DNA of 64,000 nt from Hemiscyllium ocellatum (Eukaryota): assembly GCF_020745735.1 (NCBI RefSeq), contig NC_083409.1, positions 14,975,873-15,039,872 of the forward strand, in the 5' to 3' direction. The translations under genes were made by a program, and so were the position numbers. The notes beneath the pieces were generated by a model. It made no database searches, was not told the DNA's origin, and was given only the letters and a program-made list of their open reading frames with translations. Positions 1 to 40,534 of the stretch are shown here, in pieces. Position 1 is the stretch's first letter; each line of letters begins with the position of its first letter.

Positions 1-504
1 GAATCAGGTGGAGCGTGACCAGCTTGCTCAGTAGTGATGCTTCTGAGCAGCTTTTGATGGTGGACTTCGAAGTCCCTTACTCAGGGTATATCCTGCATCA
101 TTCCCATCCTCAGTGCTTCCTCCAAGTGTTGTTCAACATGGAGGAGGACTGACTGCTCAGTTGAGGTTGGAGCGGAGGGCGGTGCTATGTGATAATCAGC
201 AGGAGGTTTCCTTCCCCATGTTTGACCTGCTGTCATGAGGCTTCATGGATTCCATAGTTAATGGTGAGGACTCTCAGGGCAACTCCCTTCCGACTGTATA
301 CACCACTGTGTTTTTTCCCCTGCTTGGTCTATCCTGCCAGTTATAAACTGAATGAGGGAACAATTCTGTGCAGGTTTCACAGCTTGGAGACAGAGCAGCT
401 GCTGGATTCTGTTTCTGATCTCCGAGTGCAGGCGTGTGTGTTTGTGAGAGAATGACTGACACCTTTTCCAAAACTGTGCTGTTTCTGCAAAAAATAAATC
501 CTAG

Positions 505-790
505 AACCAGCCTCCTGTGCTGTCAGATTCCAGGGAGTGCAGATGGTTCACAGTTTTCTCCTGTCTCAGTAACAAACACCCAGCTGCTCTGAGCTCCTTC
601 TTTCTCTTCCTCTTTTGGTGAAGTTTCAACCTTGCGATCTGACAGCCTTTGCAGTTATTTTTTACACTGGGGCTTTCTGCTGTGGTCAGAATCTCTAATA
701 ATAAGTGTCTAATCAGTGACAATCACAGCAGCTAAGAGCAGTCAGGACTGAGGTGCCAGGCTCACTGTGAAACATATTGGGAAGATCAAA
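505..790. promoter_or_regulatory. Candidate B-cell enhancer module, copy 1, inverted (EICE 601-612, CAGCTG 581-586, kB-like GGGGCTTTCT 669-678, RUNX TGTGGT 681-686)
   Basis: Reverse-complement match to 22700-22995 with all four motifs retained. Confidence 0.5.
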
Positions 791-1260
791 GCCATCCTCT
801 TCAGATTCTGGTATAAACTCCATCCCTCTCCCTGAGCACTGTCTGCTGCTCAACCAGACTCTTTACAAACTGGGTCTCATGTTTGAGAATGATCTAAGCC
901 CCATATCTTCCATATCACAAAGATCAGCCACTGAAAATCTCAGCCAGGTTTATGGGGCTCCAAACATGACCATTCCAATGGCTGATGCACATCACAGCCA
1001 CTGCCCTCCGTATCCTTCAGCTCATCCAAAATTATGCAGCCCGTATCCAAACTTGCACCAAGTCCCGTTCCCACAACCCCCTGCACCTCGTGCCTATATT
1101 GGCTCCTGGTCAAGCAACACCTCGATTTTCAAATTCTCATCGTTGTTCTCAAATCCCTCTCTGCCCTCCACTCTCCCTATCTCTGTAACCTCCTCCAAGC
1201 TGCCTCACTCCGTGTGGTCAGCAATCTTGGATAATTGGCTCTCTATTCCTTCATCCAAGT
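790..1260 (+). mobile_element. L2 LINE ORF2 3' fragment
   Basis: Degenerate LHWLPV/IDFKIL-like L2 C-terminal coding sequence. Inverted paralog at about 22310-22700. Confidence 0.6.
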
Positions 1261-1399
1261 CATTGAGAAATATCGTGAAATACTGAGGCCCCTGCACAAA
1301 TCCCTGGGGACACCACTATTCACATCTTGTTTATTGGAGAGCATTATCCCTCTTCTCTGTCTCCTACCTCCAAACTAATTCCTAACCAAAGACAAATAC

Positions 1400-2275
1400 T
1401 TTTCTATCACTGTCTTGATGATAGGAAGCAGAGGTAATATTGGAAGGATGCTTGTCAGACTGGAGGCCTGTGTTGAGTGGAGTGCCTCAGGGCTCAGTGC
1501 TGGCCCCATTACTGTTTGTTATCAATATTAATGATTTGGATGAGAAACTGTAAGGCATGATTAGTAAGTTTGATGTGCAGGTCAGGTGAATTGGCCATGT
1601 TAAATTGGCCATAGTCTAAGGTACATTAGTCAGTGGGAAATGGGTCTAGGTGGGTTACTCTTCAGAGGATTGGTGTGGATTGGTTGGACCGAAGACCTGT
1701 TTCCACACTGGAGGGAATCTAATCTCTAATCTTGTACAGGATGTCAGTGAGGTCGCACTTGGAATATTGTATTCAGTTTGGTCACCTTGTTATAGGAAGG
1801 ATATTACTAAACCAGAAAGAGCACAGAAGAAATTTACAAGGATGTTGCCTGGACTCAACATATAGGGAGAAGTTAGGCAAGTTAGGACTTTTTTCTTAGA
1901 GTGTAAGAGACTGGTTGGGAAACCTTTAGAAGTGTATAAGATCATGAGAGACATGGATAGGTTTGGAGAATCGAGGATGAGAGGGCATCAGTTTAGTGTT
2001 AGAGAGAAATGAATAAAAGGGAACCTGAGGGGCAACATTTTTACACAGAGGGTGGCACGCATGTGGAATGAGATGCCAGCTGAAGTGATTGAGGTGGATA
2101 CATTAACAATATTTAAAAGACATTTGAACAAATACATAGATAGGAAAACATTTGAAGGATATGGGCCAAGTGCAGGGAAATGGGGTTAGCATGGATGGAA
2201 ATTTTGGTCAGCACGGTCCATTTTGGGCCAAAGGGCCTGTGTCTGTGCTGTAGGACTCGATGGCTCTAAGACTCT
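1400..2275 (+). mobile_element. CR1 LINE 3' fragment with an internal SINE piece (~1575-1735)
   Basis: Degenerate VPQGSVLGP, LEYCVQFWSP and FTRMLPG motifs, followed by a CR1 3' tail. Confidence 0.8.
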
Positions 2276-2309
2276 ATAATTCCATATGTTTCCATGTTTA
2301 TGAACAGTC

Positions 2310-3595: not shown

Positions 3596-3599
3596 CAAA

Positions 3600-8340: not shown

Positions 8341-8477
8341 TCGCTGCTCCTCGGATGCTGGCTGAATGGCTGTGCTCTTCCAGCACCACTCATCCAGAAT
8401 TCAGTGGAGATGTTCATTGTGAGTGAGGTTAGTAAACAGCTAGTACTGACACAAGGGGCTGAACAGCCTCCTTCTAG

Positions 8478-18085: not shown

Positions 18086-20255
18086 ATATATATAGAACAT
18101 ATAGAAGGATACAGCGCAGTACAGGCCCTTCGGCCCTCGATGTTGCGCCGACCGAGTCCTACCTAACCTATACTAGCCCAATAACTTCCAAATGCCTATC
18201 CAATGCCCGCTTAAATGACCATAAAGAAGGAGAGTTCACCACTGATACGGGCAGGGCATTCCATGAACTCACAACCCGCTGTGTGAAGAATCTACCCCTA
18301 ACATCTGTCCTATACCTACCACCCCTTAATTTAAAGCTATGTCCCCTAGTAACACCTGACTCCATTAGCGGTAAAAGGTTCTTAGTATCTACCCTATCTA
18401 AACCCCTAATCATCTTATACACTTCTATCAGATCTCCCCTAAACCTTCTCTTCTCCAATGAGAACAGCCCCAAGTGCCTCAGCCTTTCCTCATAAGATTT
18501 TCCTACCATTCCAGGCAACATCCTGGTAAACCTCCTCTGCACTCGTTCTAAAGCTTCCACATCCTTCCTATAGTATGGCGACCAAAACTGCACACAATAC
18601 TCCAGATGAGGCCGCACCAGAGTCTTATACAACTGCAACATGACCTCAGGACTCCGGAACTCAATTCCTCTGCCAATAAAGCCCAGTACACCATATGCCT
18701 TCCTCACAGCACTATTTACCTGGGTGGCAACTTTCAGAGATCTGTGTACATGGACACCAAGATCCCTCTGCTCATCCACACTACCAAGTAGCCTACCATT
18801 AGCCCAGTAATCCATCATCTTGTTATTCCTACCAAAGTGAACGACTTCGCACTTAGCTACATTGAATTCCATTTGCCACATTTCCGCCCAGCTCTGCAAC
18901 TTATCTATATCCCGCTGTAACCTACCACTTCCTTCCTCACTATCCACAACTCCACCGACTTTTGTGTCATCCGCAAACTTGCTTACCCAGCTTTCAAGTC
19001 CTTCCTCTAGATCATTTATAAAGATAACAAAAAGCAATGGTCCCAAAACAGATCCTTGTGGTACACCGCTAGTAACTGTGCTCCAAGATGAACATAATCC
19101 ATCAACTACTACCCTCTGTCTCCTTCCAGCCAGCCAATTCCTAATCCAAACCTCTAATGTATCCTCAATGCCATACCTCCGAAGTTTTAGCATTAGCCTA
19201 CCATGGGGAACCTTATCGAACGCCTTACTAAAATCCATATACACAACATCTACTGCTTTACCCTCATCCACTTCCTTGGTCACCTTCTCAAAGAACTCAA
19301 TAAGGTTTGTGAGGCACGACCTGCCCTTCACAAAACCATGCTGGCTATCCTTGATCACGTTATTCCTACCCAGATGTTCATAAATCTTATCCCTTACCAT
19401 TCTCTCTAAGACTTTGCCCACCACTGAAGTCAGACTCACTGGCCTATAGTTGCTAGGGCTATCCCTACTCCCTTTCTTGAACAATGGGACCACATTCGCT
19501 ATCCTCCAGTCCTCTGGTACTATTCCTGTTGACAACGACGACATAAAAATCCAGGCCAATGGCTCTGCTATCTCCTCCCTAGCTTCCCATAGGATCCTGG
19601 GGTAAATGCCATCAGGCCCAGGAGACTTATCTATATTCATCCTTTCCAATATTCCCAAAACCTCTTCCCTGCATATTTCCAGGGCATCCATTCTAATTAT
19701 TTGTGATTCCATATTCACATCAGCAACAGTGCCCTGTTCCTGAGTGAATACTGATGAAAAGTACTGATTTAATGTCTCTCCAATCTCCTCCGCCTCCACA
19801 CACAACTTCCCACTACTATCCTTGACTGGACCGATACCTACCCTAGTCATCCTTTTATTCTTGACATACCTATAGAAAGCCTTTGGGTTTTCCCTAATCC
19901 TACCAGCTAAAGACTTTTCATGTCCCCTTCTCGCTTCTCTTAGCTCCCTCTTTAGCTCCTTCCTGGCTACCTTATAACACTCAATCGCCCCTACTGAACC
20001 TTCACGCCTCATCTTTACATATGCCGCCTTCTTCCCTTTCACAAGGGACTCCAATTCCTTACTAAACCACGGCTGCCTTACCAGGCCCTTTACACCATGC
20101 CTGACTGGTACATACCTATCGAGGACACGCAGTAGCTGCTCCTTGAACACTCCCCACATCTCATTAGTGTTCTTCTCTTGAAGCCTGTTTTTCCAATCCA
20201 CACATCCTAAGTCATGCCTCACTGCATCATAATTTCCCTGCCCCCAGCTATAGTT
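18086..20255 (-). mobile_element. Young 5'-truncated CR1 LINE with an uninterrupted RT reading frame
   Basis: ORF 18168-20306 has no stops and contains QGSVLGPLLF and FADD. The endonuclease domain is missing. The 3' UTR ends in a TTCTATAT-type tail. Confidence 0.95.
18168..20255 (-). CDS. CR1 ORF2 reverse transcriptase, 5'-truncated
   Basis: 712-aa ORF call; the first ~17 residues come from flanking DNA. Confidence 0.9.
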   Translation of the reverse strand, partial: NYSWGQGNYDAVRHDLGCVDWKNRLQEKNTNEMWGVFKEQLLRVLDRYVPVRHGVKGLVRQPWFSKELESLVKGKKAAYVKMRREGSVGAIECYKVARKELKRELREARRGHEKSLAGRIRENPKAFYRYVKNKRMTRVGIGPVKDSSGKLCVEAEEIGETLNQYFSSVFTQEQGTVADVNMESQIIRMDALEICREEVLGILERMNIDKSPGPDGIYPRILWEAREEIAEPLAWIFMSSLSTGIVPEDWRIANVVPLFKKGSRDSPSNYRPVSLTSVVGKVLERMVRDKIYEHLGRNNVIKDSQHGFVKGRSCLTNLIEFFEKVTKEVDEGKAVDVVYMDFSKAFDKVPHGRLMLKLRRYGIEDTLEVWIRNWLAGRRQRVVVDGLCSSWSTVTSGVPQGSVLGPLLFVIFINDLEEGLESWVSKFADDTKVGGVVDSEEGSGRLQRDIDKLQSWAEMWQMEFNVAKCEVVHFGRNNKMMDYWANGRLLGSVDEQRDLGVHVHRSLKVATQVNSAVRKAYGVLGFIGRGIEFRSPEVMLQLYKTLVRPHLEYCVQFWSPYYRKDVEALERVQRRFTRMLPGMVGKSYEERLRHLGLFSLEKRRFRGDLIEVYKMIRGLDRVDTKNLLPLMESGVTRGHSFKLRGGRYRTDVRGRFFTQRVVSSWNALPVSVVNSPSLWSFKRALDRHLEVIGLV

Positions 20256-21149
20256 CCCAATCTGAATGATTCTGCAACTATGTCTCATTATTTGATACGA
20301 TACCACAATCTTAAATTTGAATTTGTGCCTGCAGATTATTGTATTTATTCCTTACGCTTCATGCATTCGGATATAGAACTCTTATTTAGTCCATTCATTG
20401 GAATCTGTTCCTCAGCACTGATGCTGTATTCACCTCTTTCTTATTTCTCTCCATCTGTCTAATCAATATCCTTCTGATAGCTTTCCTGATATTGTCCAAA
20501 TAGGGCCTTTTGCCGATTTTTGTTGACGTTGTTGGTCCCGACACAGACAACAACAACTGGATCCTCAACCCCCACCCCCCCCACCCCCCAAGTCTGTTAT
20601 ACTTAAAAGCCGGCTCGAGATGCCCTTACCTTGAAACCAGGCAGGCAACACACCATGTGGGGCTCTCAATCCTGCTCACAAAGGATGCTATCAGTTCCCC
20701 TCATTATCAAGACCCCTCTTTTCTTTATGCTCCCCCAGTCTGAGTGGTCTCCTGGACCATGGTGCAGTGGTTTCCTTCATTCATTCATAGGAAATGGACA
20801 TCTCTGGCCAAGCCAGCAATGACTGCCCGTAGGAGTCATCGAATCATAGAATCCATACCGTGTGAAACAGGCCATTCAGACCAATGAGTCCACACCAACA
20901 TTCTGAAGAGCATCCCACCCAGACTTGTCTCCCTACCTTATCCCTGTAAATCTGCATCTCCCATGGCTAATGCACCTAACCTACACATCCCTACATTTTC
21001 CCCAGTTTAGGCATTATAATTTCTGCCCTATCTTTATCTTTTTATATAATGACTTTGAAACTTACAGAGTTATGGTCACTATCACCAAAATCCTCAAACT
21101 ACATTTTCCCATTCTCCCGACAATCCTTTTCCTCATTGACACAGGGAGC

Positions 21150-21480: not shown

Positions 21481-22309
21481 CCGGCCCTGTATGTGGAAAT
21501 TATTTGAGGAGTTTTTAATTTATATTTTAAAATTTGCTGCTGGTCTTTAGTTTTTAATCTGTAAAATATTTCAGTCCAGGAGACAGAGAATGTGCCAGCA
21601 CAGGAGGAGGCTGTTCAGCCCCTCGTGTCAGTGCTAGCTGTTTACGAGCCTCAATCACAATGAACATCTCCATTGAATGTCTGTTGTCAGGAAGTGGTTG
21701 AGTCTGTTTTTAGAGACAGAATAACGGACAAATATGAACTGGTCCGAGAGAGTCAGTCTGGATTGACAAAGGTTCAGACATCTTTAACTAACCGGGTTAC
21801 ACTTTGTTAGGAGCTCACTGGTGTGGGATATAAGGGAATGTCGATGGCTATTGTCTATAGGGAATTCCAAAAGACATTTAAGAATGTTCCACAAAAGAAA
21901 CATTGATTCAGACCTTACACTCCACAACCATCTGATGAAGGAGCAGCGCTCCAAACGCTGATGCTTCCAAACAAACCTGTTGCATTAGAACCTGGTGTTG
22001 TGTGATTTTTAACATTTACACGACAGTCCAACACCGGCATCTCCAAATCATGGAATTGGATGGAATTTGAGAAATGCATTTACCTTGGGTCAGGAATGGG
22101 TCTGTCTAAGAGACAGAGAGGAAGGATAATGTGCGTGTGTTCCAATGAGCCAGATGTGAGTAGTGGTATTCCCAGGGATCTGTGCTGGGACCTCAGCTTT
22201 TCACGATATTTCTCAATGACTTGGATGAAGAAACAGAGAGCCATATATCCAAGATTATTGATCACAGTGAGTGAGGCAGCTTGGAGGAAGTCACAGAGAT
22301 AGGGAGGGT

Positions 22310-22700
22310 GGAAGAACAGGGAGCAGATTGAGAACAAGGATGAGAATTTGAAAATCGAGGTGTTGCTGGACCAGGAGCTTATGTCAGTCAGTGAGGATTG
22401 TGATGGTCATGGTGGAGTAGGGAGGCGTGGACAGGAGTATGGGGTGGACTTGGTGTGAGTTTGAACACTGACAGCAGAGTTTGGGATGAGCTGATGTTTA
22501 CGGAAGTCAGTAGCTGTGATGTGGGCGTGGATAACATTGGAATGGTCTCAAAAACATGGTTGAGATTTTCAGTGGCTGATAATCGTGATGTGGAGGATTT
22601 GGGCCTCAAATCAGCCCCAAAGATGAGGCCAAAGTTGTAAAGAGTCTGGTAGAGCAGCAGACAGTGCTCAGGGAGAGGGATGGAGTTTGTACTGGGAGCT
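22310..22700 (-). mobile_element. L2 LINE fragment adjoining the enhancer-like module
   Basis: Reverse-complement similarity to 790-1140 and the same junction with the module. Confidence 0.6.
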
Positions 22701-22995
22701 GAAGAGGATGGCTTTGATCCTGCCAATGTGTTTCCCAGTGAGCCTGGCTCCTCAGTCCTGACTGGTCTTAGCTGCTGTGATTGTCACTGATTGGACACTT
22801 ATTATTAGAGATTCTGACCACAGCAGAAAGCCCCAGTGCAACAAATAACTGCAAAGACTGTCAGAGCGCAAGGTTGCAACTTCACCAAGAGAGGAAGTGA
22901 AAGAAGGAGCTCGGAGCAGCTGGGTGTTTGTTACTGAGACAGGAGAAAACTGTGAACTGTCTGCACTCCCTGGAATCTGACAGCACAGGAGGAGG
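22700..22995. promoter_or_regulatory. Candidate B-cell enhancer module, copy 2 (EICE 22891-22902, CAGCTG 22917-22922, RUNX ACCACA 22817-22822, kB-like 22825-22834)
   Basis: Motifs read directly from the sequence. Inverted paralog at 505-790 is about 94% identical. Function is inferred. Confidence 0.55.
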
Positions 22996-23574
22996 CCATT
23001 CAGCCCATCATGCCTTTGAATGACCCAGTTAATCCCACTGCTCCCCTCTCTCTCCCCGTAACCAAGCAAATCTTTCTTTTATAGCTCAATCTCCAATTCC
23101 CTCTTATAGACCTCATGTCCACAGAGTGAGACTGCCCTGAACCTGGACTTCAAATTGGCATCTCATTCATTCATTGGGAGACAAACTGCCTGGGCTGGGA
23201 AATGGAGCTCAGGATCCTGAACATTCCCTCTCCCCTCCTGAGGGACACTTCATTTGGTTTTACATATTCACCTGTGGGAAGTGGGCATCACCGGCTGGGC
23301 CAACATTTTTTACCCTGTCCCTAGTTGCCCTGGAGAAGGTGGTGGGAAGCTGCCATCTTGAATTGTTATCGTCCACAAGCTGTAAGTTGACCCACAATGC
23401 CAGCATTTTAACCCAGCAAGGCTGAGGGATCAGCGACATATTTTCAAGTCCGGATGCTAAGCTTTTTCGAGGGGAACTTGCAGCTCACAGTGTTCCCATG
23501 TATCTGCTGCTCTTGTTCTAAATGGAAGTGAACGTGGGTTTGAAGGGAAACCAAAAGAACTGCAGATGCTGTAA

Positions 23575-23740
23575 ATCTGAGACAAAAATAGAAAGTGCTG
23601 GAAAAGCTCAGCAGGTCTGGCAGCATCTGTGAAGAGAAATCAGAGTTAATATTTCATACTCAACCCGAAATGTTAATTCTGATTTCTCTCCAAGATGCTG
23701 CCAGACCTGCTGAGCTTTTCCTGAAATTTCTATTTTTGTC
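23575..23740. mobile_element. Palindromic Penelope end of a diverged family
   Basis: gacaaaaatagaaa..ctcagcaggtctggcagcatct and its reverse complement flank a short centre. Confidence 0.7.
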
Positions 23741-23899
23741 CATGGGTTTGGAAGGTGCTATCTGAAGATCAGTGATGAATTTCTGCAGTGCATCTTATCG
23801 ATAATACACACTGCTGCTATGGAGCGTCAGTGACGGTGAGTTTGGGTGTTTTGAGAATGCGATGCCAATCAAGGAGTTTGCTTTGCTCTGGATGGTATC

Positions 23900-25390
23900 A
23901 AGCTTTTTGAGTGGATAAGAAAGACATAGGATACAATCGACATAGATAGGAAAGGTTTCAAGGGATATGTGTGAAACGCAGGCAAATAAGATGAGTTCAC
24001 TTCAGAAAACTTGGTCAGCATGTAGAAGTTTGGCTTAAGGGTTTGTTTCTGTGCTGTTTGACTCTGTGACACTATCAATCAATGAATGTTGTTGGAGCTG
24101 CACCTGTCCAGGCAAGTGGGGAGTATTTGCTCACACTCCTGACTTGGTTGACAGGCTTTGGGGGATCAGGAGGTGAATTACTGGATGCAGTATTCCTAGC
24201 CTCTAACTTGCTCTTGTAACCACTGTGTTTCTTTGGTGAATACAGTTGTGTTTCTGGTCAATGACACCTCAAGAATGTTGATAGTGGGGATTCAGTGATG
24301 GTAATAGCATTGATTGTCAAGGGGCGATGTTTAGATTGTCTCTTATTGGTGATGGTGATTGGCTGGCATTTGCATGGCACCAATGGGAAATGTCACTTCT
24401 CAGACAAAACTTGGATATTGTCCAGATATTGTTGCATTTGCATGTGGACTGCTTCAGTATCTGAGGAGTTGGGAAGAGTGCTGAGCATTGTGCAATAAGA
24501 GTTTGCCTTGAGTTGCAATATCTGTTCGGAGTCTGTCCTATTTAGTACGGTGATAGTACCACACAACACAATGGAGGGGATTCTCAATGTGAAGGACAGA
24601 CTTTGTTTCCACAAGGACTGTGTGATGGTCACTCTTACCAATACTGTCAAGGATAGATGCATCTACAGCCATAAGATTGGTGAGGATGGGGTCAAGCAAC
24701 TTTTTCCATCTCTTTGGTTCCAGCTGCAGAGCCAGTCCCTCAGCTACATCCATGAGGAACCAACCAGCTCGATCAGTAATGCTGCTGCCGAGCCACTCTC
24801 AGTGGTGGACATTGAAACCCCCCCACACAGAGTACACTCTCTGCTGTCATCACCCTCAGTGCTTTCTCCAAATGTTGTTCAACATCCAGGAGAGACTGAT
24901 TCATCAGCCGAGGGAGCAAGATATCTTGTAATCACCAGGAGGTTTCCACGCCCATGTTTAACCTGGTGTCATGAGTCTTCACGGGAGACAACTTTGAGAC
25001 TTCCCAGGGTAACTCCCTTCTGGCCGTAGACCACTGTGTCATCAGCTCTGCTGGGTCTGCCTTTCTGGTAGGACAGGACACATGCAGGGACAGTGATGGT
25101 GGTGTCTGGGGCATTGTCTGTAAGGTATGGTTCTGTGAGTGTGACTGTGTCAGACTGTTGCTTGAGTCATCTGTGAGACAGCTCTCCTGAATTTGGCACT
25201 AACTCCCAGATGTCAGTAAGGAGGATGGAGCAGGGTAGACAGGGTTGTTTCTGTCATTGTCTTTTTGGTGTCTAGATCGATGCCTGTGGTCCGTCCGGTC
25301 TCATTTCTTTGTTGAAACATTGTCATAATTGATACAACTGAGAGCCTTGCTCGGCCATTTCAGAGGGCACTAGAGAGTCAACCACATTGC
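23900..25390 (-). mobile_element. Decayed LINE (CR1-group-like) with EN and RT remnants; related pieces at 1-345, 51030-51200 and 52770-52900
   Basis: Shared cctcagtgct..ccaa.tg.tgttcaacat motif; LDSIGKSDHHTV endonuclease remnant. Confidence 0.55.
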
Positions 25391-27958: not shown

Positions 27959-28053
27959 GAAGAGGAAGTATGAGGACGTGGCTCTCTCTGCCTGATGCCA
28001 TTTACATACTGAGGAACACCCAGTCAGACTCTCACAGGCTGCAGCTTTATAAA
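27959..28053 (+). promoter_or_regulatory. V-gene promoter: PU.1/Ets box AGAGGAAGT (27961-27969), octamer variant ATTTACAT (28000-28007), TATAAA (28048-28053)
   Basis: Order and spacing upstream of the leader ATG match Ig light-chain promoters. The octamer has one mismatch to ATTTGCAT. Confidence 0.75.
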
Positions 28054-28113
28054 GCAGAGCCCAGTGAAGGGAGAGTTTATCAGGAACCAGGCACAGGGAC
28101 AGGAGCACACACC

Positions 28114-28162
28114 ATGATTTCACACATCCAGCTGATCTGGCCCCTGGCATTCTGTGTCGCAG
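28114..28162 (+). CDS. IGKV: Ig kappa-type light chain, exon 1 (leader MISHIQLIWPLAFCVAG)
   Basis: ATG at 28114, hydrophobic leader, phase-1 GT donor at 28163. Splices in frame to the AG at 28347-28348. Confidence 0.95.
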
Positions 28163-28348
28163 GTACAAATCTCTCTCCTTCCACCTTGAATCTTTCGCTG
28201 CTCTCCATTTCACTCCAATTCCACTGACTTGTGATTGAAGGGAAAATGCTGAAACCAGAGGAATGCTCAGTGTCTCCAACAATCTCTCATTTGACCGGCT
28301 CTTTCTGTGACAGTTCTGACTTCACTGTGTTTCTCTTTGACCCCTCAG

Positions 28349-28678
28349 GTATCAGTGGGGACATCAGCATGACCCAGTCTCCCCCGGTGCTGTCAGTGGG
28401 ACGGGACCAGACCGCAACACTCACCTGTACGGCCAGTCAATCTGTTAGCAACTATGTTAACTGGTACCAGCAGCGAGAAGGTCAGAAACCCTCTCTCCTG
28501 ATCTATCGTGCAACAACTCGATTCACAGGAGTCTCCGAGCGATTCACCGGCAGTGGATCAGGGACCAGTTTCACCCTGACAATCAGCAACGTTCAGAATG
28601 AAGATGTCGCTGACTATTACTGTCAGCAAGGTTACAGCTGGCCTTACACGTTCGGTAAAGGAACCAAGCTCAGACTGA
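28349..28678 (+). CDS. IGKV: Ig kappa-type light chain, exon 2: pre-joined V-J (DISMTQSPP...[21 protein letters not shown])
   Basis: Canonical LTC, WYQQ, DYYC and FGKGT motifs in one frame. V runs straight into J at about 28644/28645 with no heptamer or nonamer. Perfect GTAAGT donor at 28679. Confidence 0.96.
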
Positions 28679-29053
28679 GTAAGTAAACCTCAATCCTCTG
28701 TTATTAACCCTGTCAATACTGAAACACACTTTCTAAAATACAGTTACTGATTTGTTGAAGGTGTTAGTGGGAAGCTGCAGTGAATGAAATGGTTGATTGA
28801 GGAGCACTGTGTCTAACAGGGTGTCCAGCTGTATTTCTTTACTTTCATGCCCTCTTTAAAAAAAGCAAGATATAAGTCAGTCAGTTTTACTCACTGTGTG
28901 GAGGAGCTCTGTCCATTTGCAGCCTGTGGTCCCATTCCTGCAGCATGGAGTGAAATCAGTGAGTAGCCTCCTGCCAGTCTCAGTGTGACGGACACGGGGC
29001 AGAGTTTGATGTGAGCTCTGGCTCCCTGTCCCAGTCTCTGATCTCACTGACCT

Positions 29054-29077
29054 CAGCAGCAGCAGCAGCAGCAGCAG
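29054..29077. repeat. (CAG)8 trinucleotide repeat
   Basis: Counted directly. Confidence 0.95.
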
Positions 29078-29530
29078 CACAGTGAGACACCGAGCTCCCA
29101 CCTCCCCCAGCTTTAACTCTGCTCAATCACACAATCACAGAATTGTTACAGTGCACAAGGAGGCCATTCCATCCATCCTGTCTGGACTAGCTCTCTGAAT
29201 GAGCAATTCACTGAGTGTCATTCTCCTGCCTTCTCCCTGTCACCCTGCATATTGTTCCTTTTCAGATAACAGTCTCATTCCCTTCGGAATGTTTCAATTG
29301 AAGCTGCCTCCACCACACTCTCAGGCAGTGCATTCCACACCTTAACCACCCACTGGCTGAAAATGTTTTCCCTCATCTCACTTTTCTTACTTTTTCAATT
29401 ACTTTCAATCTGTGGCCTCTCGGTCTCAATCCTTTCACAAGTGGAATCATTTTCTCCCTATTTACTCTGTTCCAGGCCCCTCCTGATTTTGAATTTCTGG
29501 AACAATTCTCCTCGCTGCCTTCTCCAAAGA

Positions 29531-29732
29531 CTTGAAGGTGCAGGGGTTGGACTGGGGTGGACAAAATTAAAAATCACACAACACCAGGTTATAGTCCAAC
29601 AGAGGGTTTATTTGGAAGCACTAGCTTTCGGAGCGCCCCTCCTTCATCAAATGGTTGTCAGCGGTGCTCCAAAAGCTAGTGCTTCCACATTAACCTGTTG
29701 GACTATAACCTGATGTTGTGTGATCTGTAACT
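29531..29732. mobile_element. Palindromic Penelope end of a second family with an 11-bp TSD
   Basis: ttctccaaaga at 29520-29530 and 29733-29743; arms span about 29573-29724. Confidence 0.8.
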
Positions 29733-29799
29733 TTCTCCAAAGAAGGCAGTCCCAAATTCTCCAATCTATCTTCATAACTGATATTCCTCATCCCTGGAA

Positions 29800-32700
29800 T
29801 GATCTTTGTGCATAAGTTTGCCAGCTCTACAAAACATTCACCTCCTTCCTGCATTATTCACATTATTTATGTCCCTCATGATTTTATAAACCTCTATAAG
29901 GTCACTCCTCAGCCTCCAGCACTTCAGGGTAAAAGATCTCAGCTTTTCCAGCCTCTAATGGTCACGGAGTCATACAGCGTGGAAACAGATCTTTCAGTCT
30001 AACTTCTCCATGCTAACTAGATATCCAAAACTGACCTCATCCCATTTGCCAGCATTTAACCCACATTCCTCTAAACCCTTCCTATTCATGTACCCATCCA
30101 AACATCTTTTAAATGCTATAATTGTATCCGTCTCCAACACTTTCTCTGACAGCTCGATCCGTACACGCACCACCCTCTGTGTGACAAGTTACCCCTCAGG
30201 TCCCTTTTGCATCTTTTGCCTCCCATCTTAAACCTGTACCCTCGAGTTTTAGATTCCCTTTCCCAAGGCAAAGACCTGGGATATACACCCTGTCCATGCC
30301 TGTCATGGTTTTATAAACATCTATACGGCCACCCCTCAGTCTCCGATCCTGCAGGAAAAATAATCTTCCGACAGTTCAAACCCTCCAGTTCCAGGCAACA
30401 TCCATGTAAATCTTTTCTGAAGAATTTTAAGTTTAACAGCATCCTTCCTATCACAGGATGATCAGAATTGTTCACATTATTCCCAAATTTCCTGTACAGC
30501 TGCAAATGATGTCCCAACTCTGATACTTAGTGCAGTGATCAATAAAGGCAAGTATACCCAACACCTTCTTCATCTCCCTGTCTCCCTGTGACTCCACTGT
30601 CAAGGAATAATGCCCCTGCCCCTGCCCCTGCCCCTGCACCCTGAGGTCACTTTGTTGAGCAACACCCCACAGGGCCCCACCATTAACAGTACAAGTCCTG
30701 CCCTGGTTTGATTTTCCAAAATGCAACATCTCACATTTATCTAAATTGAACTCCATTTGTCACACGTTTAGATCAGAGCGGTGCTGGAAAAGCACAGCAG
30801 GTCAGGCAATTTCCGAGGAGCAGGAAAATTGCCGTTTCAGGCAAAAGCCCTTTATCTGGATTCCTCTAGCCGAAAAGTCGATTTTTCTGCTCCTCGGATG
30901 CTGCCTGACATGCTGTGCTTTTCCAGCACCATTCTGATCTAAACTCTGATTTCCAGCATCTACAGTCTGCACTTTTGTCCATTTGCCACAACTCTGCCCA
31001 TTTCCCCAAATGATCAAGGTCCCACTGTACTCTCAGATAGCCTTCTTCACTATCCACTGTACCAATTTTGGTGTCATTTAAAAACTCGCCATAATTCCTA
31101 TATTCACATCCAAATCATTTATTTAAATGATGAAAAGCCATGGACCCAGCACCAATCCTTGTGGCACACAGCTGACATCTGATCTCCAATCTGAAAAGCA
31201 ACCCCTTACCACCACTCTCTGACTCCTATCTTGAAGTCATTTTTTTACCCAAATGGCTAGCTCCCCCTGGATCCCATGTGGCCTAACCTTACTAATCAGT
31301 CTATCATGTGGAACCTTGTCAAATGCTTTGCTGAAGTCCATATAGACAGTGTCTACTATTCTGCCTACATCAATCTTCTCTTCAAACAACCTTAATCATG
31401 TTAGTGAGACACGATTACCATGCACAAAACTGCATTGATTGTCCAAATGCATGTAAATCCTGTCCCTCAGAATTCACTCCAATAACTTACCCAGCAATGA
31501 CATCAGGCTCACTGGTTTATAGTTCCCTGGCTTTTCCTTAAACAATGGCTAACATTAGCCAACCTCTCTGGTTCTCCAGAACCTCACTCATGGCTGTCAA
31601 TCAGAAACATACCTCAGCAAGGGGTCCAGCAATCTCTTTCCTAGCTTTCGACAATGTCCTGGGATACACCTGATCAGGTCTTGGAGATTTATCTACCGTC
31701 TTGCACTTTAAGAAATCCTCTTCTGTAATGTGGACTTGTGTCAAGACATTACTATTTACTTCCAAAGTTCCCAAATTTCCATGTCTTTCTCCATGATAAA
31801 TACTGACCTGGAATATTCATTTAAGACCTAAACCATTTCCTGTGGACCCACCCAGAGGTACATTGTTCATCTTCATGGGGCCCTATTCTCTCTCTAGTTA
31901 CTCTTTTGCCCTTTTCTTATTTACCATAATTCTACCACTTTTGCCCTTGAGTAAGTTCAGGAATTGTTTGCCCTCCTTCAAATGTATCTCGACTATACCT
32001 GGTCCACATCCTCTACTATTCTTTTCAGGACTTTCCTGCCAACCTTTGATCCCACTTTATTCAGATCCAATACATCCATATCCTATAGAAGCTGGCATTT
32101 CCCCAGTGAAGATGTTTGACCCTGAAAAGGCCTTTGTTCTTTTTTACCATCACCCTCAACTTTGTGATACAATGATCACTCTTCCTTAAGTGTCCTCTCA
32201 CTGACACTTGATCCACTTGGTCCTCCTCATTCCCAAGATCCAGATCTCGCAGAGCCTCCTTTCTCATTGGACTGGAAACCTGCGGCTGGAGAAAATTCAC
32301 ATGGACACACTCTCACGACTCTGGCCCCTCTGTCCTTCACACTGCTACTACCCCAGTCTATATTCAGAAATTAAAGACATTCCACGCTCCCCCCCCAAAA
32401 AAAAATAATGACTATTATATTTGCAGGTCTCTGTAAATTCCTTGCAAATGTAGTCCTCTAAATCCATCCCACTGGGTGGTAACTTATTGACTGCACTAAT
32501 GATTCTGTGGACATTGGTGTTCCTCTCTGACAGTTCCTCCTGACTCCCACAGCCCTGCCAAGTTAGTTTAAACCCTCTCCAACAGCACGAGTAGATCACC
32601 TCAAAGGAGCTCAGTGCCAGCTCTGTTCAGGAGCAGCGCTGTCTGGTCTATCCAGGTCCCATCTCACCCAGACCCAGTCCCAATGTCACAAGAATCTAAA

Positions 32701-33500
32701 ACCCTCCCTCCTGGATCCTCTTTCCAGCCCCACAGACACTTGTGTTATCCTCCTGCTCCTCTTGTCACTTGCCTGGGGCACTGGGAGTAATCTGAAGATT
32801 TCTACCTTTGAGTTCCTGATGTTAATTCTCTCCAGCGCCCCCTAAATTCTAATTGCAGGACTACATCCTTTTCTCCCTCTGTCACTGGGACCGATGTGGA
32901 CCAAAACTGCTGCCTGTTCCCCTCTCCCCTCAGGGTGCTTTGCAGTCGCTTAGTGACATTCTTCACCCTGGCACCAGGGAGACAACACGCCATCCTGGAT
33001 TCCCATCTGCAGCTGCAGAAACACCTATCGATGCCCTCACTCTCAAATCTCCTTTCACGATCAGTCTTCCTTACACTAACCCCCCTCCCCCCCACCCCAC
33101 CACCACCCCCCCAACAATATAGCTGAGTCACCAGTGGTGCCATGGACTTGGCTCTGGATGCACTCCCCAGATGAACCATCATTCTCATCAGGATTCCAAA
33201 CTGAATCCTGGTTGGAGAGTGGGATGCATTCAGGGGATTCCTCTACTAGCTGCCTGGTCCTTTTGGACTGTCTGCTGCTCCCCCATTCCCTCACTCCCTG
33301 CATATTCTGAAGCTGCGGAGTGACCACATCTAGAAACGTGTTCTCCATGGAGCTCTCAGCCTCACGGACGGTCCGCACTGACACCAGCTGCTGCTCAAGC
33401 TCCGAAATCCGGAGCTTCAACTGCTGTCAATGACCACACTTCCTGTACTCATAGTATTCCAGGAGCTAGGAAGCATTCTGAAATTCCCACATGGATGCAT
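29800..33500 (-). mobile_element. Stacked decayed CR1 elements in the J-C intron (RT, EN and ORF1 fragments)
   Basis: MEFNLDKCEMLHFG, HLRKSDHC and MACCLPGARVKNV motifs. Confidence 0.75.
30765..30977. mobile_element. Palindromic Penelope end with a near-perfect 13-bp TSD
   Basis: tccatttg(t/c)caca at 30752-30764 and 30978-30990. Confidence 0.8.
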
Positions 33501-33619
33501 TCTCTCTCCACTCTTTGGTTATCTCTTGGCAAAGTTCTGATGACAAACAGCTCCAGCAGGGCTCACAGTCCAGTGGGTTCAGTGTTCCAGGGTTTTGGGG
33601 AAACTCACCAGAAGTCTTT

Positions 33620-36500
33620 AAGAAATAGGAGCAGAAATCAGCCATTCAGCCCATTGAATCTGCTCTGCCATTTGATCTTGGCAGATATGCTTCTCACCCC
33701 CATTCTTCTGCGTTCAATCCCCTTTACAATCACAAACCTATCTATCTCTGTCTTAAATACACTCAGTGACTTGGCCTCCCCTGCCCTCTGTCGCTGTGAG
33801 TTCCACAGATTCACCACCCTCTGGCTGAAGAAAGTCCTCATCTCAGCTCGAAAGGGTCGGCCCTTCATTCTGAGGCTGTGCCTTGGTTACTGAGTCTCTC
33901 CTGATTATGGAAAAATCTTCTCCCCATCCACTCTATCCAGGCCTATCAGTATTCTGTAAATTTCAATAAGATCCCTTCTCATCCTTCTAAACTCCATCGA
34001 GTACAGACCCAGAGTCCTCAAGCACGCCTCATATGACAAGGCTTTCATTCCCAGGATCATTCTTGTAAACCCCTCCAATGCCAGCACATTGTTTCTTAGA
34101 ATAGGGGTCCCAAATCTGCTCACAATATTCCAAATTCAGTCTGATGAGACTCTTACACAGCCTCAGCAGTACATCTCTGCTCTTGTATCCTGGCCCTATT
34201 GAAATGAATGCTATTATTTCATTTGCCTTCCCAAGCACAAACTGGACCTGCCTGTTAACCTGAAGAGAAACCTGAATGTGGTTTGTGCTTTAGATTTCCA
34301 AAGGCTTTCCTCATTTAGCAAACCATCTTTGCATCTCTTCTTCCTCCCAAAGTGCACACCCTCACACTGTCACACATTATATTCTATCTGCCACTTCTTT
34401 GCCCACTCTCTGAGCCTATCGAGGAGCTTTTACAGCCTTCCCACTTCCTCAACACTACCTGTCCCTCCACCTACCTCATGTCACGAGCAACAATGTCTTC
34501 ATTTACTTCATCCAGATTGTTAATGTATAACGTGAATAGTTATGGTCCTAACATTGACACCTGCAGAACTCTGCTCATCACCAGCGGCCATTCTTCCTCA
34601 CGCTCTGCTTTATGCCAACCTGCCAGTCCTCAGTCCATGTCAGTACATTGCCCCTAACACTGTGGGCGCTTATCTTATGTCAAATGCCTTCTGAAAATCC
34701 AAATAGATTACTTCCTCGGACTCTCCTTTGTCTGACTGGCTCATTGCCTCCTCAAAGAATTCTAACAGATTTGCCAGGCATGACGTCTCCTTGATGAAGC
34801 TATTGCACTTCCAATCCTCTGCAATTTCATCATTAAATTGAAGTCTAAAACCTTACCAACATCTGAGTCCTGGCTAACTGGCCTATCATGTCCCATCTTC
34901 CACCTCCCTCCCTTCTTAAACAGGGGTGGTATGTGAGCCATTTTCCTGTCCCTTGCCCCCACCAAATCCGTCCCCATCTCACCTCCATACCCTGACTCCA
35001 TTGATTCCTGAAAGATCATCACCAATGCCTCCACAATCTCCTCAGTGATCTCCTTCAGAACACACGGGTGTAGTTCGTCCAGTCTGGGTGCGTTATCCAC
35101 ATTCAGACCTTCCAGCTTCCCCAGTACCTCCTCCTTAGTGATGGCCACTGCACTCCCATCCGACCCCTGACAGTCTTGAATTACTGGGACACTGCAGGTG
35201 TTTTCCATGGTGCAGACTGATGCAAAGTATCTATTCAATTCCTCTGCTATTCCTAATTTTCCTGTTATTCTTTCTCCAGCCTCACTTTCCAGTGATCCAT
35301 AGTCTATTTTTGACTCCCTCTTCCTTTTTATACACCTGATAAAACTCCTGCAATCTTCTTTTATATGACTGGCTAGATAACTCCCACATTTCACATTCTC
35401 CACCCTTAATGCTTTTTCAGTTATCCTCTGCAGGTTTTAAAAGGCTTCCTAATCCTCGGGCTTCCCACTATTCTCCACCACATTGTGTGCTTTTTCTTTT
35501 GCTTTTCTGCTGTCCTTGACCTCCCTCACCAGCCATGGTTGCCTTGTTCTCCCCTGAGTATGTTTCTTCTTTTTTGGGATGAATTCCTGCTCTGCTTCCT
35601 GAATTACCCCCAGAAACTCTGCTGTTTGCTGCCCCACCATCTTACCTGCTCGGCTCCCCTTCCAACCAACTCTGGCCAGCTCCTTCCTCATGTCTTTGGA
35701 GTTACCTTTACTCAACTGAAATACTGTTCAATCTGATTGCAGCTTCTCTCTCAAACTACAGGGGAATTCTATCGTATTATTGTCATGTATCCATTGGGAT
35801 ACTTTCACCTTAAACTCACTAATCAAGTTTTCCTCGTTACACATCACTGAATCCAGACCTGCCTGTTCCATCATGGCTCAACCACAAGCTGCTCCAAAAT
35901 CCATCTCGTCGACATTCCGCGAAATCCTTTCCTTGAGCCGCGCTACGCAGTCCACCTATCCATTGAGGTCTGCCCTGATACTTTGTGTATGACTTTTCTG
36001 TCTCCTGATTGATTTCCTTCCCCACACCCTGATTACTGCTTGGAGACCTGGACATAACTTGCATCAGATTCTTTGTTTATTGCAGTTCCTCAACTCTACC
36101 CACACAGATTCTACACCTTCTGACTCTCCATCACTTCTTGCCATAGATTTAATTTCATTTCTCACTAACAAGGCAACACTTGTCCCTCTGCCCATCTGCC
36201 TGTCCTTTTGATGGGACATGTATCCTTGAATATTTAGTTCCCAGCCTGGATCCCCTTACAGCCATGTCTCTGTGATACCCATAACACCGTACCTGCCAGT
36301 TTCAATCTGCACTACAATCTCATTGTGTATACTGTGTGCATTTAAGTACAACACCCTCAGTCCTGCATTGACTGCCCTCCTTCTCATCATTGTCCCCTTA
36401 TCTGCTGTGCTTTATGTTCGATTCCTGATCCTTTCTGTACTCACTGTCCTTTTACATCTTCTAGAAACTTGAATAACCTTTCCTGAGCCCTCCTCCACTT
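33620..36500 (-). mobile_element. Decayed CR1 in the J-C intron
   Basis: FFSQRVVNLWN, LNLEYCEQIW and ELNRYFASV motifs. Confidence 0.8.
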
Positions 36501-39090: not shown

Positions 39091-40205
39091 GAAAAACAGT
39101 TTCTCCCATGTGTCTTCTGGAACCACCTCGCTGACCTGCATTCATTAATCACCATGGCCACATCTTCCAGCTCCACACACATCTGACTTCCAGCTTCAAA
39201 ATGATGAGAGACATCCCTTCATTATCTGAGAAACAGATAGAAACATCAAACACAGGAGCAGCAGTAGGCCATTCGGCCCTTCAAGCCTGCTCCACTATTC
39301 AGTATGATCATGGCTGATCATCCAACACAGATCCCTGTTCCTACTTTCTCCCCACATTCTTTGATCCCTTTAATCCTAAGTATATCTAATTCCTTCATAA
39401 ATACACATTGCATCTAATTCCCTTTTGCTGGAAAAATGGATGACAATTATTGGGTTGTTATTTTTTGACCAGTATGGACACAATGGGCTGATGGGCCTTT
39501 TGGGTCCCTATGACTCTATTGTGATATATTATGAATAACTGGGTACCAAGGGCTGACCCCTGTGGCACCCTAAGTTGTAATTACCTGCCATTCAGAAAAA
39601 GACTCATTCTTTCTGTGCTGCCTGCCAACCAGTTCCCAATCCAAGTCTGTACATGAACCCCAATCCTCTTGTTCATTTGGTCTAGATCTGGAAGTCCCAC
39701 CCTTACTCATTGTGGGAACAGATTCTGAACAGTCTGTCTCATCCTTCGAGGGCTCCCACTGCCCTGACACTGATTTCCCATCATGCCATTGGTTCCGATC
39801 CACTTTTACCAAAGCACCGCACAGTTTCATAAAATGAAAACTTTTACACTTGCTCCATGGTTCTCCATTTCCATCCCTACTCTCAATCTCACTGAGTTCT
39901 GATCACTGTCACTAAAATGCTCCCACATTGATAGCCCTTCCAGATGCCCACATTCATTCCATAACCGATGGTCCAAAACTGTCCCTTCTCTCTCTGCTGC
40001 TTCACCATCACCTTCTCAGGGGCAACTAGGGACGGTAATGAATGCTGGCCCTGCCAGTGACACTCAGATCCCAAGAAGCAATTTGAAAAGTGTCTGTTCT
40101 TTTGTTGACTACAAATGTTCAAAAAGATTGTATTGCCAGTGAATATTGTGAGGGTTGAATTCCCTTCAAATGGCAGGGATTAAAACTGTTTCTCTTGCCT
40201 TTCAG

Positions 40206-40534
40206 CCCGTGACAACTCTCAGCCCAAGCTGACCCTGCTGCCCCCCTCCCCGGAGCAGGTCAATGCCAAGGGCACTGCCACCCTGGTGTGCCTTGCCAAC
40301 CACTTCTATCCCGATGAGCTGGAGGTGCAGTGGAAGAAGGATGGTGCAGTCATTTCGGACGGGGTTCAGACCAGCAACTACCTGCGAGCTTCGGACAGCA
40401 CCTACAGTGTCAGCAGCCTGCTGACCCTCTCTGGGTCTGACTGGGAGTCCAACGCTCACTTCTCCTGTGCCCTCACCCACGTGACCCTCCCCTCTCCCCT
40501 CAGCAAGAGCATCAGGAGATCAGAATGTGTGTAG
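40206..40534 (+). CDS. IGKC: Ig kappa-type light chain constant exon (RDNSQPKLTLLPPS...ATLVCLANHFYP...W...FSCALTH...SECV*)
   Basis: Pyrimidine tract and ttcag acceptor at 40201-40205, phase matches the J donor. C1-set Cys/Trp/Cys and penultimate Cys present; TAG at 40532-40534. Spliced CDS is 49+330+329=708 nt, 235 aa. Confidence 0.96.

What the first reader, a model, noticed from the sequence alone, without database searches (positions are those of the whole stretch)
22700..22995. Duplicated ~290-bp candidate Ig light-chain enhancer (EICE + E-box + RUNX + kB-like)
Seen: this block is about 94% identical (roughly 17-18 differences in 290 nt by eye) to the reverse complement of 505-790, while the L2 fragment joined to both copies is only about 80% identical. 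Both copies keep GGAAnnGAAA, CAGCTG, TGTGGT and GGGGCTTTCT. Established: PU.1/IRF composite sites with E2A boxes are the core of mammalian Ig kappa 3' and lambda enhancers. Inference: this is a constrained cis-module 5.1 kb upstream of the V leader that travels with duplicated shark light-chain clusters.
Basis: partly seen in the sequence, partly recalled or inferred. Interest (0 to 1): 0.75.

Follow-up and report, generated by a model that had tools for sequence, protein, structure and literature searches.

The report
Conserved upstream module of shark kappa genes
A 356-base non-coding block about 5 kb upstream of a shark antibody kappa light-chain gene, with an inverted second copy, changes two to four times more slowly than its flanks and keeps the binding-site set of mammalian light-chain enhancers, so it is probably the gene cluster's own B-cell switch, though no activity has been measured.

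Summary
Window 22637-22992 (+) and 866-511 (-) differ at 23 of 356 bases (93.5%). The shared left flank is only 78.5% identical. All four motifs are present in both copies.

The block is not a dispersed repeat. Its depth in four public contig sets is 100-1000 times below the true repeats lying beside it.

It lies upstream of kappa V genes, on the V strand, in Chiloscyllium punctatum (two loci) and Stegostoma tigrinum (2.35-6.4 kb upstream). In every pair it is less diverged than both flanks.

Against a divergent cluster (background about 70-75%), a 60-nt core is 95% identical, and it is the only such island upstream of the promoter. EICE, 14 nt, then CAGCTG is exact in five of six copies.

Copy B most likely serves a head-to-head neighbour cluster beyond the left edge of the window.

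Best reading (0.55): a constrained, cluster-linked cis-regulatory module, most likely a lymphoid enhancer. No activity, factor-binding or chromatin data could be obtained.

The scan has already noted the same block at other kappa clusters of this genome (s1-228462, s1-216793, s1-228455, s1-203484, s1-213655).

The parts
22637..22992 (+). Block copy A, the candidate cis-regulatory module. It lies 5.1 kb upstream of the V leader, on the same strand as V.
   Evidence: 93.5% identical to copy B with no gaps. 93.5% to C. punctatum L001:3266-3620, 90% to Stegostoma L005:7292-7634, and 77.5% to both L002 copies.
511..866 (-). Block copy B, inverted. It is probably the module of a head-to-head neighbour cluster beyond the left edge of the window.
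   Evidence: Its onward flank, window 1-399, is 91.75% identical to L004:8726-8327, which ends 5.6 kb upstream of a kappa V leader in the orientation predicted.
22797..22956 (+). The most invariant 160-nt core of the block.
   Evidence: 13-16 of every 20 columns are invariant across six copies, apart from 9 and 11 in two of the eight bins. Divergence from L002a is 17% in the core against 29% in the rest of the block, p = 0.008. 22795-22854 is 95% identical to the divergent L002 cluster.
22893..22902 (+). ETS-IRF composite element (EICE), GGAAGTGAAA.
   Evidence: Intact in A, B, L001, L005 and L002a; degraded in L002b. It matches the top PU.1+IRF8 co-bound motif GGAAGTGAAAC at 10 of 11 positions (PMC3214047).
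22917..22922 (.). E-box CAGCTG, 14 nt after the EICE.
   Evidence: Present in all six copies. The exact pattern EICE-N14-CAGCTG occurs once each in L001, L002 and L005, and only at the two copies in the window, against 0.03 expected for a 5-30 nt gap.
22817..22822 (-). RUNX core TGTGGT.
   Evidence: Kept in 5 of 6 copies.
22825..22834 (-). kB-like GGGGCTTTCT, 9 of 10 to GGGRNWYYCC.
   Evidence: Kept in A, B, L001 and L002a. Two bases differ in Stegostoma and three in L002b.
22799..22808 (.). MEF2-type consensus match TTATTATTAG inside the invariant core.
   Evidence: It meets the full consensus only in A, B and L001 and is partly kept elsewhere. This is a lead only.
22070..22636 (+). Left flank shared with copy B and with L001, poorly conserved. 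A LINE RT fragment lies at 22086-22283.
   Evidence: 78.5-81% identity between A, B and L001. tblastn to the LINE ORF. Absent beside the Stegostoma copy.
867..1405 (-). Left flank of copy B.
22993..23251 (+). Right flank of copy A (A-type). It is shared with L001, L002a and L005 but not with copy B.
   Evidence: 86%, 68% and 83% identity to L001, L002a and L005. It is always lower than the block in the same pair.
1..510 (-). B-type flank lying between copy B and the presumed off-window V.
   Evidence: Homologous to L002:471-~1000 and to L004:8327-8726.
28114..28683 (+). The kappa gene that copy A would serve. Leader 28114-28164; germline-joined VJ exon with splice acceptor near 28349, mature V from 28360, J ending at 28683.
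   Evidence: The leader is identical to Hemiscyllium and nurse-shark kappa leaders.
40205..40531 (+). C-kappa exon of the same gene. The J-C intron is 11.5 kb.
   Evidence: 98% amino-acid identity to C. punctatum kappa P0002.

Best explanation
The block is a selectively constrained cis-regulatory module that belongs to each shark kappa V-J-C minilocus. It is most likely a lymphoid (B-lineage) enhancer.

Proposed mechanism (inferred, not shown):
- An ETS factor of the PU.1/Spi family recruits an IRF4/8-type partner on GGAAGTGAAA.
- An E-protein binds CAGCTG exactly 14 nt away.
- A RUNX factor, and possibly a Rel or MEF2-type factor, bind the invariant core 70-95 nt upstream.
- The assembled complex opens chromatin and activates the V promoter a few kb downstream on the same strand.

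Copy A would serve the germline-joined VJ-C gene at 28114-40531. Copy B would serve a neighbour cluster lying head-to-head beyond the left edge of the window.

Shown: the duplication, the sharp contrast in conservation, the linkage to V and the fixed orientation in two genera, the motif-level conservation, and the low copy number.

Inferred: any factor binding, enhancer activity, and the target gene.
For: 1. Slower change than both flanks in every pair:
- Block divergence is 6.5-8% among A, B and L001, against 19-21.5% in the left flank and 14% in the right flank.
- It is 10% against Stegostoma, with 17% in the right flank.
- It is 22% against L002a, with 32% in the right flank.
- Fisher p ranges from 3e-10 to 0.02.

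2. A, B and L001 form a star. Each has 9 private changes and A and B share none. The similarity of A and B is therefore not a recent local conversion between them.

3. Footprint against the divergent L002 cluster: the only 40-nt windows of 90% or more upstream of the promoter are 22795-22854. All others are the 5'UTR and leader, V framework, intron islands, the C exon and the 3'UTR.

4. L002a has 0 of 30 motif positions changed at a 25% background rate, P = 1.5e-4.

5. EICE-N14-CAGCTG is exact in L001, L002 and L005, once each, on the V strand.

6. Fixed orientation and upstream position: 5.1 kb (A), 6.4 kb (L001), 4.7 kb (L002a) and 2.35 kb (Stegostoma).

7. Not a dispersed repeat. Summed contig depth is 540-1,275 over the block against 1.2e5-8e5 over true repeats in the same 2.5 kb in X1, and 8.6-21 against 2,000-10,900 in X3. 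There is no other copy in the 64-kb window despite dozens of LINE fragments.

8. No conserved ORF, no Pfam hit, no Rfam hit and no covariation, and no RNA run holding it.

9. Literature:
- GGAAGTGAAAC is the top motif at sites co-bound by PU.1 and IRF8 in B cells (PMC3214047).
- The mouse kappa 3' enhancer depends on a PU.1-bound ETS site (bioRxiv 10.1101/2022.12.28.522117).
- PU.1-family genes exist in a cartilaginous fish (PMC13670022, citing Anderson 2001).
Against: - There are no functional data of any kind: no accessibility, no binding, no reporter assay.
- Against Stegostoma the block (90%) is no better kept than the alignable J-C intron segment next to J (88%) or the V region (85-87%). 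The contrast is with its immediate flanks, not with everything in the cluster.
- The two copies in the L002 pair are only 67% identical to each other, and L002b has lost the RUNX site, the kB-like site and half of the EICE.
- One kappa cluster (L004) shows no block in 10 kb of assembled upstream sequence. That sequence has an 884-nt gap, and the V of that cluster is frameshifted.
- The motifs were chosen after the fact from a large set of possible factors. The EICE count in the window is at chance level.
- In a gene array of this size, array-wide gene conversion can also produce a star-like pattern.
Confidence: 0.55

Rival explanations
1. Concerted evolution without function. The block is simply the part of the kappa repeat unit that array-wide gene conversion or unequal crossing-over keeps homogenising. 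The motifs are incidental.
For: The gene family is a large array (scan note s1-228448, unchecked, speaks of about 200 copies). The C exons are 96-99% identical between paralogues. A, B and L001 form a star, which conversion from many donors could also give. A and B are far closer (6.5%) than L002a and L002b (33%), although both pairs have the same flank types.
Against: Conversion would have to stop at the same left boundary (about 22637) in A/B, A/L001 and the Stegostoma copy. A and B share no derived change. It does not explain why the changes in the divergent L002a copy avoid the motif positions (0 of 30), nor why a 60-nt core stays at 95% in a 70-75% background.
Confidence: 0.15
2. A regulatory element of another kind. 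It could be the promoter and start site of an upstream non-coding (sterile) transcript of the cluster, or a boundary or tethering element, rather than a classical enhancer.
For: An AT-rich TATA-like run (TTATTATTAG, 22799-22808) lies about 20-30 nt before the invariant CAGCAGAAAG stretch. The orientation relative to V is fixed in every copy, which a true enhancer does not need.
Against: No RNA-type contig set of the related organisms holds any of its words. No splice donor or conserved ORF follows it. The site set (ETS-IRF, E-box, RUNX) is that of lymphoid enhancers.
Confidence: 0.15
3. A remnant of a low-copy mobile element that was in the ancestral cluster and was copied with it. On this reading it has no host function.
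For: It abuts a LINE RT fragment on the left, and the region is full of repeats. In contig set X11 the block is 5-10 times deeper than its flanks, with up to 44 distinct contigs at one position.
Against: Depth is 100-1000 times below real repeats in the same stretch. It resembles none of the many LINE and other repeat pieces in the window. It has no terminal inverted repeats or convincing target-site duplication. A neutral relic would diverge like its flanks, and it does not. The X11 excess is expected if flanks fall under the 80% likeness cut while the block does not.
Confidence: 0.07

Closest known systems
Mouse Ig kappa 3' enhancer and Ig lambda enhancers (PU.1/IRF4 composite site plus E2A site)
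   Same: It has an ETS-IRF composite element of the canonical form GGAANNGAAA. Here it reads GGAAGTGAAA, matching 10 of 11 positions of the PU.1+IRF8 co-bound motif in PMC3214047. An E-box lies nearby at fixed spacing, and the element is linked to a light-chain gene. The dependence of the kappa 3' enhancer on a PU.1-bound ETS site is stated in bioRxiv 10.1101/2022.12.28.522117.
   Different: It lies upstream of V rather than downstream of C. There is one copy per minilocus in a multi-cluster array. Sequence homology to the mammalian elements was not tested, because no such sequence was available to the tools. My recollection that the EICE-to-E-box spacing is within 1 bp of the mouse kappa 3' enhancer is from memory only. 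No binding or activity data exist.
Channel catfish IGH enhancer Emu3'
   Same: It is the best characterised Ig enhancer of a fish. Its compact core is built from an E-protein (muE5) site plus other lymphoid sites (PMC1800861).
   Different: The catfish core uses two variant octamers, not an EICE. It is a heavy-chain enhancer and lies 3' of the gene. In this window the catfish variant octamer ATGTAAAT occurs in the V promoter (28000-28007, minus strand), not in the block.
Interspersed repeat (LINE or SINE 3' end, or MITE)
   Same: It is a multi-copy sequence with sharp boundaries, next to a LINE fragment.
   Different: Its copy number is low, its position and orientation relative to V are fixed, it has no repeat hallmarks, and it changes more slowly than its flanks.

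Membership tests
EICE-type Ig light-chain enhancer (kappa 3' / lambda type) | ETS-IRF composite element GGAANNGAAA | tested here: met
   22893-22902 and 601-610. Intact in 5 of 6 copies from two genera.
EICE-type Ig light-chain enhancer (kappa 3' / lambda type) | E-protein site close to the EICE at conserved spacing | tested here: met
   CAGCTG lies 14 nt after the EICE, with the same spacing in all six copies.
EICE-type Ig light-chain enhancer (kappa 3' / lambda type) | Cooperative binding of PU.1/Spi and IRF4/8; E2A binding | not testable with these tools
   This needs EMSA or ChIP with shark factors.
EICE-type Ig light-chain enhancer (kappa 3' / lambda type) | B-cell-specific enhancer activity independent of position and orientation | not testable with these tools
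   No reporter, ATAC or histone-mark data could be reached. The orientation is in fact fixed in all copies seen.
EICE-type Ig light-chain enhancer (kappa 3' / lambda type) | Location in the J-C intron or 3' of C | tested here: not met
   The block is 2.35-6.4 kb upstream of the V leader in all four loci where V is in view.
EICE-type Ig light-chain enhancer (kappa 3' / lambda type) | Sequence descent from the tetrapod enhancers | not tested
   No tetrapod enhancer sequence was available in the tools. Loci from other shark orders (Cetorhinus, Heterodontus, Scyliorhinus) could not be served.
Constrained non-coding element | Lower divergence than both flanks in independent comparisons | tested here: met
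   All nine block-against-flank tests were significant, p from 3e-10 to 0.02. The core is conserved at exon level against L002.
Dispersed repeat / transposable element | High copy number at unrelated loci | tested here: not met
   Depth is 100-1000 times below neighbouring true repeats. All four copies with V in view are upstream of it. A full genome map was not possible.
Dispersed repeat / transposable element | Terminal repeats, target-site duplication, or coding remnants | tested here: not met
   There is only a 10-nt imperfect direct match near the ends of copy A, and it is absent in B. No Pfam hit and no open frame shared by the copies.
Structured non-coding RNA gene | Rfam match or compensatory base changes | tested here: not met
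   No relevant Rfam hit. The covariation term is unfavourable (+4.98), and most changes break the predicted pairs.
Plain segmental duplicate (neutral) | Uniform identity along the duplicated unit | tested here: not met
   93.5% in the block against 78.5% in the flank within one colinear unit.

The most novel reading that the evidence does not exclude
Every shark kappa minilocus carries its own upstream PU.1/IRF, E-protein and RUNX enhancer. If so, the EICE-based light-chain regulatory code predates the split of cartilaginous and bony vertebrates. Stochastic activation of one of many identical per-cluster enhancers could then be the physical basis of how a shark B cell picks one light-chain cluster out of a large array.
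Probability: 0.35. Interest if true: 0.8.

Novelty: new variant of a known kind. Interest (0 to 1): 0.6.

Why it matters
In the papers I could search, no enhancer of any immunoglobulin gene has been described in cartilaginous fish. Work on shark heavy-chain exclusion explicitly proposes rare formation of a promoter-enhancer complex as the limiting step (PMC2435157).

This block is short, sharply bounded and repeated per cluster, and it carries recognisable lymphoid sites. That gives a concrete thing to test by ATAC-seq, ChIP or reporter assay. It would make the question of how hundreds of Ig miniloci are individually switched on directly testable.

It would also show whether the ETS-IRF and E-protein logic of tetrapod light-chain enhancers is ancestral to jawed vertebrates.

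Tried and rejected
**Loci that could not be fetched.** Kappa loci from the chromosome-level assemblies of C. punctatum, Hemiscyllium, Cetorhinus and Heterodontus, and from S. torazame, returned no DNA because the files were too large. Conservation beyond the Orectolobiformes is therefore untested.

**Loci that said nothing.** L003 and L006 (C. punctatum) hold too little upstream sequence to be informative.

**Reads.** All laid runs were contig sets, so depth gives only a rough copy number and no expression level. X17, guessed to be RNA, covers repeats and flanks alike, so I treated it as DNA.

**Readings rejected.**
- Coding: the ORFs at 22388-22726(-), 22752-23069(-) and 777-1286(+) have no Pfam hit and are not open in the partner copy.
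- Structured RNA: rejected.
- MITE or TE: rejected.

**Possible kinship with the V promoter.** A short resemblance (GCAGA..GCCCAGTG) gave no significant BLAST match.

**Motif count.** Enrichment of the EICE in the window is no evidence. The joint chance of the three strict motifs in shuffles of the block is 0.0017, but the motif choice was made after the fact.

**Earlier scan notes by sequence.** The look-up was blank.

Full report
**1. The observation.**
The window has one inverted pair, 511-1405 against 22992-22070, at 80.5% over 939 columns. Identity along it is uneven.
- The last 356 nt (22637-22992 against 866-511) differ at 23 positions with no gap (93.5%).
- The other 567 nt are 78.5% identical over aligned bases, with 56 gap columns (Fisher p = 3e-10).
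- Homology stops abruptly at 22992/511 on one side and at about 22070/1405 on the other.
- Only 22086-22283 of the left flank is recognisable LINE reverse transcriptase. The rest of that flank, and the block itself, match nothing else in a window that holds dozens of LINE pieces.

**2. The gene context.**
- The leader ATG is at 28114.
- A germline-joined VJ exon runs to 28683.
- The C-kappa exon is at 40205-40531, 98% identical in protein to a Chiloscyllium punctatum kappa chain.
- Copy A therefore ends 5.1 kb upstream of the leader, on the V strand.

**3. Is it a dispersed repeat?**
I laid four public contig sets of related organisms on 21800-24299 at 80% likeness.
- True repeats in the stretch (21884-22051 and 23564-23647) reach summed depths of 1e5-8e5 in X1, 4e5-2.8e6 in X11 and 2,000-10,900 in X3.
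- The block reaches only 540-1,275, 16,000-38,000 and 8.6-21 respectively.
- In X1 and X3 the block is about as deep as its cluster-specific flanks.
- In X11 it is 5-10 times deeper than the flanks. This is expected if the flanks of paralogous copies fall under the 80% cut while the block does not.
- These are contigs, so the figures are rough. They fit a low- to mid-copy sequence, not a transposon family.
- In one contig of organism D the differences are dense up to 22634 and sparse after it (table 3). The same left boundary therefore appears in a fourth organism.

**4. Does it travel with kappa genes?**
I fetched the DNA around kappa proteins of other sharks.
- C. punctatum L001: block at 3266-3620, 6.4 kb upstream of the leader, 93.5% identical to A. 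The left flank there is 80%, the right flank 86% and the V region 90%.
- C. punctatum L002, a divergent cluster (V region 78.5%, C region 80%): it has two copies. L002a (4946-5298) lies 4.7 kb upstream of V on the V strand. L002b (985-1352) is inverted and lies 3.3 kb further up.
- Stegostoma tigrinum L005: one copy at 7292-7634, 2.35 kb upstream of the leader on the V strand, 90% identical to A. Homology begins exactly at 22640, and the left flank is absent there.
- The exact pattern EICE, 14 nt, CAGCTG occurs once in each of L001, L002 and L005.

The scan's own notes report the same block at other kappa clusters of this genome. I treat those notes as leads. The three loci above are my own test.

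**5. What copy B is.**
- The window and L002 are colinear from the B side through the A side to V, the J-C intron and C. The inverted pair is therefore an old feature of the locus.
- The two blocks lie 21.8 kb apart here and 3.3 kb apart in L002. The difference is LINE insertions.
- The sequence beyond copy B (window 1-399) is 91.75% identical to L004:8726-8327. That segment ends 5.6 kb upstream of a kappa V leader, in the orientation expected if B points towards a V on the minus strand.
- Copy B is therefore most likely the module of a head-to-head neighbour whose V lies about 5.5-6 kb beyond the left edge. This is inference, because the V is not in the window.
- L004 itself has no block in its assembled upstream 10 kb. 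That stretch contains an 884-nt gap, and the V of L004 is frameshifted. It is a single case and proves nothing.

**6. Constraint or homogenisation?**

| Comparison | Block | Left flank | Right flank |
|---|---|---|---|
| A, B and L001, each pair | 6.5-8% | 19-21.5% | 14% (A-L001 only) |
| A against Stegostoma L005 | 10% | absent there | 17% |
| A against L002a | 22% | not compared | 32% |

- All nine block-against-flank tests are significant.
- With Stegostoma as outgroup, A, B and L001 form a star. Each has nine private changes. A and B share none, and A and L001 share two. The closeness of A and B is thus not due to a recent exchange between the two neighbours.
- Against the divergent L002 cluster, the only 40-nt windows of 90% or more that lie upstream of the promoter are 22795-22854. 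The others are the 5'UTR and leader, part of the leader intron, V framework regions, three J-C intron islands, the C exon and part of the 3'UTR.
- Within the block, the 160-nt core 22797-22956 is the most invariant part.
- L002a has none of 30 motif positions changed at a 25% background rate (P = 1.5e-4).
- Purifying selection explains all of this simply. Gene conversion alone would need tracts that always stop at the same boundary, and it would not protect individual sites in a diverged copy.

Several points weaken the case.
- The J-C intron next to J is as well kept as the block in the Stegostoma comparison (88%).
- L002b has lost three of the four motifs.
- L002a and L002b are only 67% identical to each other.
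- Some concerted evolution in the main family therefore cannot be excluded.

**7. What it is not.**
- No ORF is shared by the copies, and there is no Pfam hit.
- There is no Rfam hit and no compensatory change.
- There are no terminal repeats.
- No RNA-type contig set of the related organisms holds any of its words. This is weak evidence against an exon.

**8. How it most likely works.**
- The 3' half packs the following, in order: an AT-rich MEF2-like run, a RUNX core, a kB-like site, an invariant AACTGCAAAG, CTTCACCA, the EICE, the E-box, and two further invariant runs (GTTTGTTACTGAGA and GAGAAAACTGTGAAC).
- The EICE reads GGAAGTGAAA, 10 of 11 positions of the motif most enriched at sites co-bound by PU.1 and IRF8 in B cells (PMC3214047).
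- The mouse kappa 3' enhancer depends on a PU.1-bound ETS site (bioRxiv 10.1101/2022.12.28.522117).
- PU.1-family genes exist in a skate (PMC13670022, citing Anderson 2001).
- The best-supported reading is a per-cluster lymphoid enhancer in which an ETS-IRF pair, an E-protein and RUNX act together on the V promoter downstream.
- That promoter carries the variant octamer ATGTAAAT at 28000-28007. The same variant is functional in the catfish heavy-chain enhancer (PMC1800861).
- Every step from motif to binding to activity is inferred.
- The fixed orientation leaves room for a promoter of an upstream sterile transcript, or another class of element.

**9. Comparison with what is known, and novelty.**
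- The block works like the EICE-type light-chain enhancers of mammals.
- It fails one of their descriptive features, position 3' of C. Descent from them was not tested.
- I found no paper describing an Ig enhancer in cartilaginous fish. Work on shark heavy-chain exclusion invokes a limiting promoter-enhancer complex without a known element (PMC2435157).
- I file it as a new variant of a known kind.
- This window is one more instance of a block the scan has already flagged at other kappa clusters of the same genome.
  - the flank-against-block rates in three lineages;
  - the star test against local conversion;
  - the footprint against a divergent cluster;
  - the copy-number check;
  - the assignment of copy B to a head-to-head neighbour.

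**10. Verdict.**
- Observation: confirmed.
- Interpretation: partly supported. Constraint and linkage are shown; enhancer function is untested.
- Confidence in a constrained cis-regulatory module acting on the kappa cluster: 0.55.
- Interest: 0.6.

Noticed in passing
window 28000-28007 (minus strand) and 28045-28055: The V promoter carries the variant octamer ATGTAAAT about 110 nt before the leader ATG, followed by a TATA-like TTTATAAAG. The same variant octamer is the functional one in the catfish IGH enhancer (PMC1800861).
   Followed up: partly
window 28202-28291, 28923-28991, 29200-29239, 32871-32910, 40858-40937: These non-coding islands are 90% or more identical to the divergent C. punctatum cluster L002. 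They lie in the leader intron, at three places in the J-C intron (the first holds a RUNX core at 28925), and in part of the C-kappa 3'UTR. They could be further regulatory or RNA-processing elements.
   Followed up: no
window 23152-23251: A second island to the right of the block is 85-95% identical to Stegostoma L005:7789-7888, while the 160 nt between it and the block are only 68-80%.
   Followed up: no
window 1406-22069: The 21-kb interval between the two block copies is packed with LINE fragments, including a 712-aa ORF with an RVT_1 domain at 18168-20306 (minus strand). The same interval is 3.3 kb in C. punctatum L002.
   Followed up: partly
window 28684-40204: The J-C intron is 11.5 kb here, against about 3.4 kb in L002. 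The extra length is largely LINE insertions.
   Followed up: no
L004 14541-14805 and 1-14000: This C. punctatum kappa cluster has a frameshifted V exon (it is split over two frames with a ~27-nt loss). It has the B-type flank but no block in its assembled upstream region, which contains an 884-nt gap.
   Followed up: partly
window 21884-22051 and 23564-23647: These are very high-copy repeats, with summed contig depth of 1e5 to 2.8e6 in related organisms. The second is flanked by many alternative joints, which suggests a short mobile element with an internal ~230-nt variable part.
   Followed up: no
window 53180-53642: This segment matches itself at offsets of 132, 165 and 198 nt, suggesting a tandem array with a period of about 33 nt.
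   Followed up: no
window 52105-52732: An inverted partial copy of the C-kappa 3' region matches 40548-41092 at 78-81%. No block copy lies near it.
   Followed up: no
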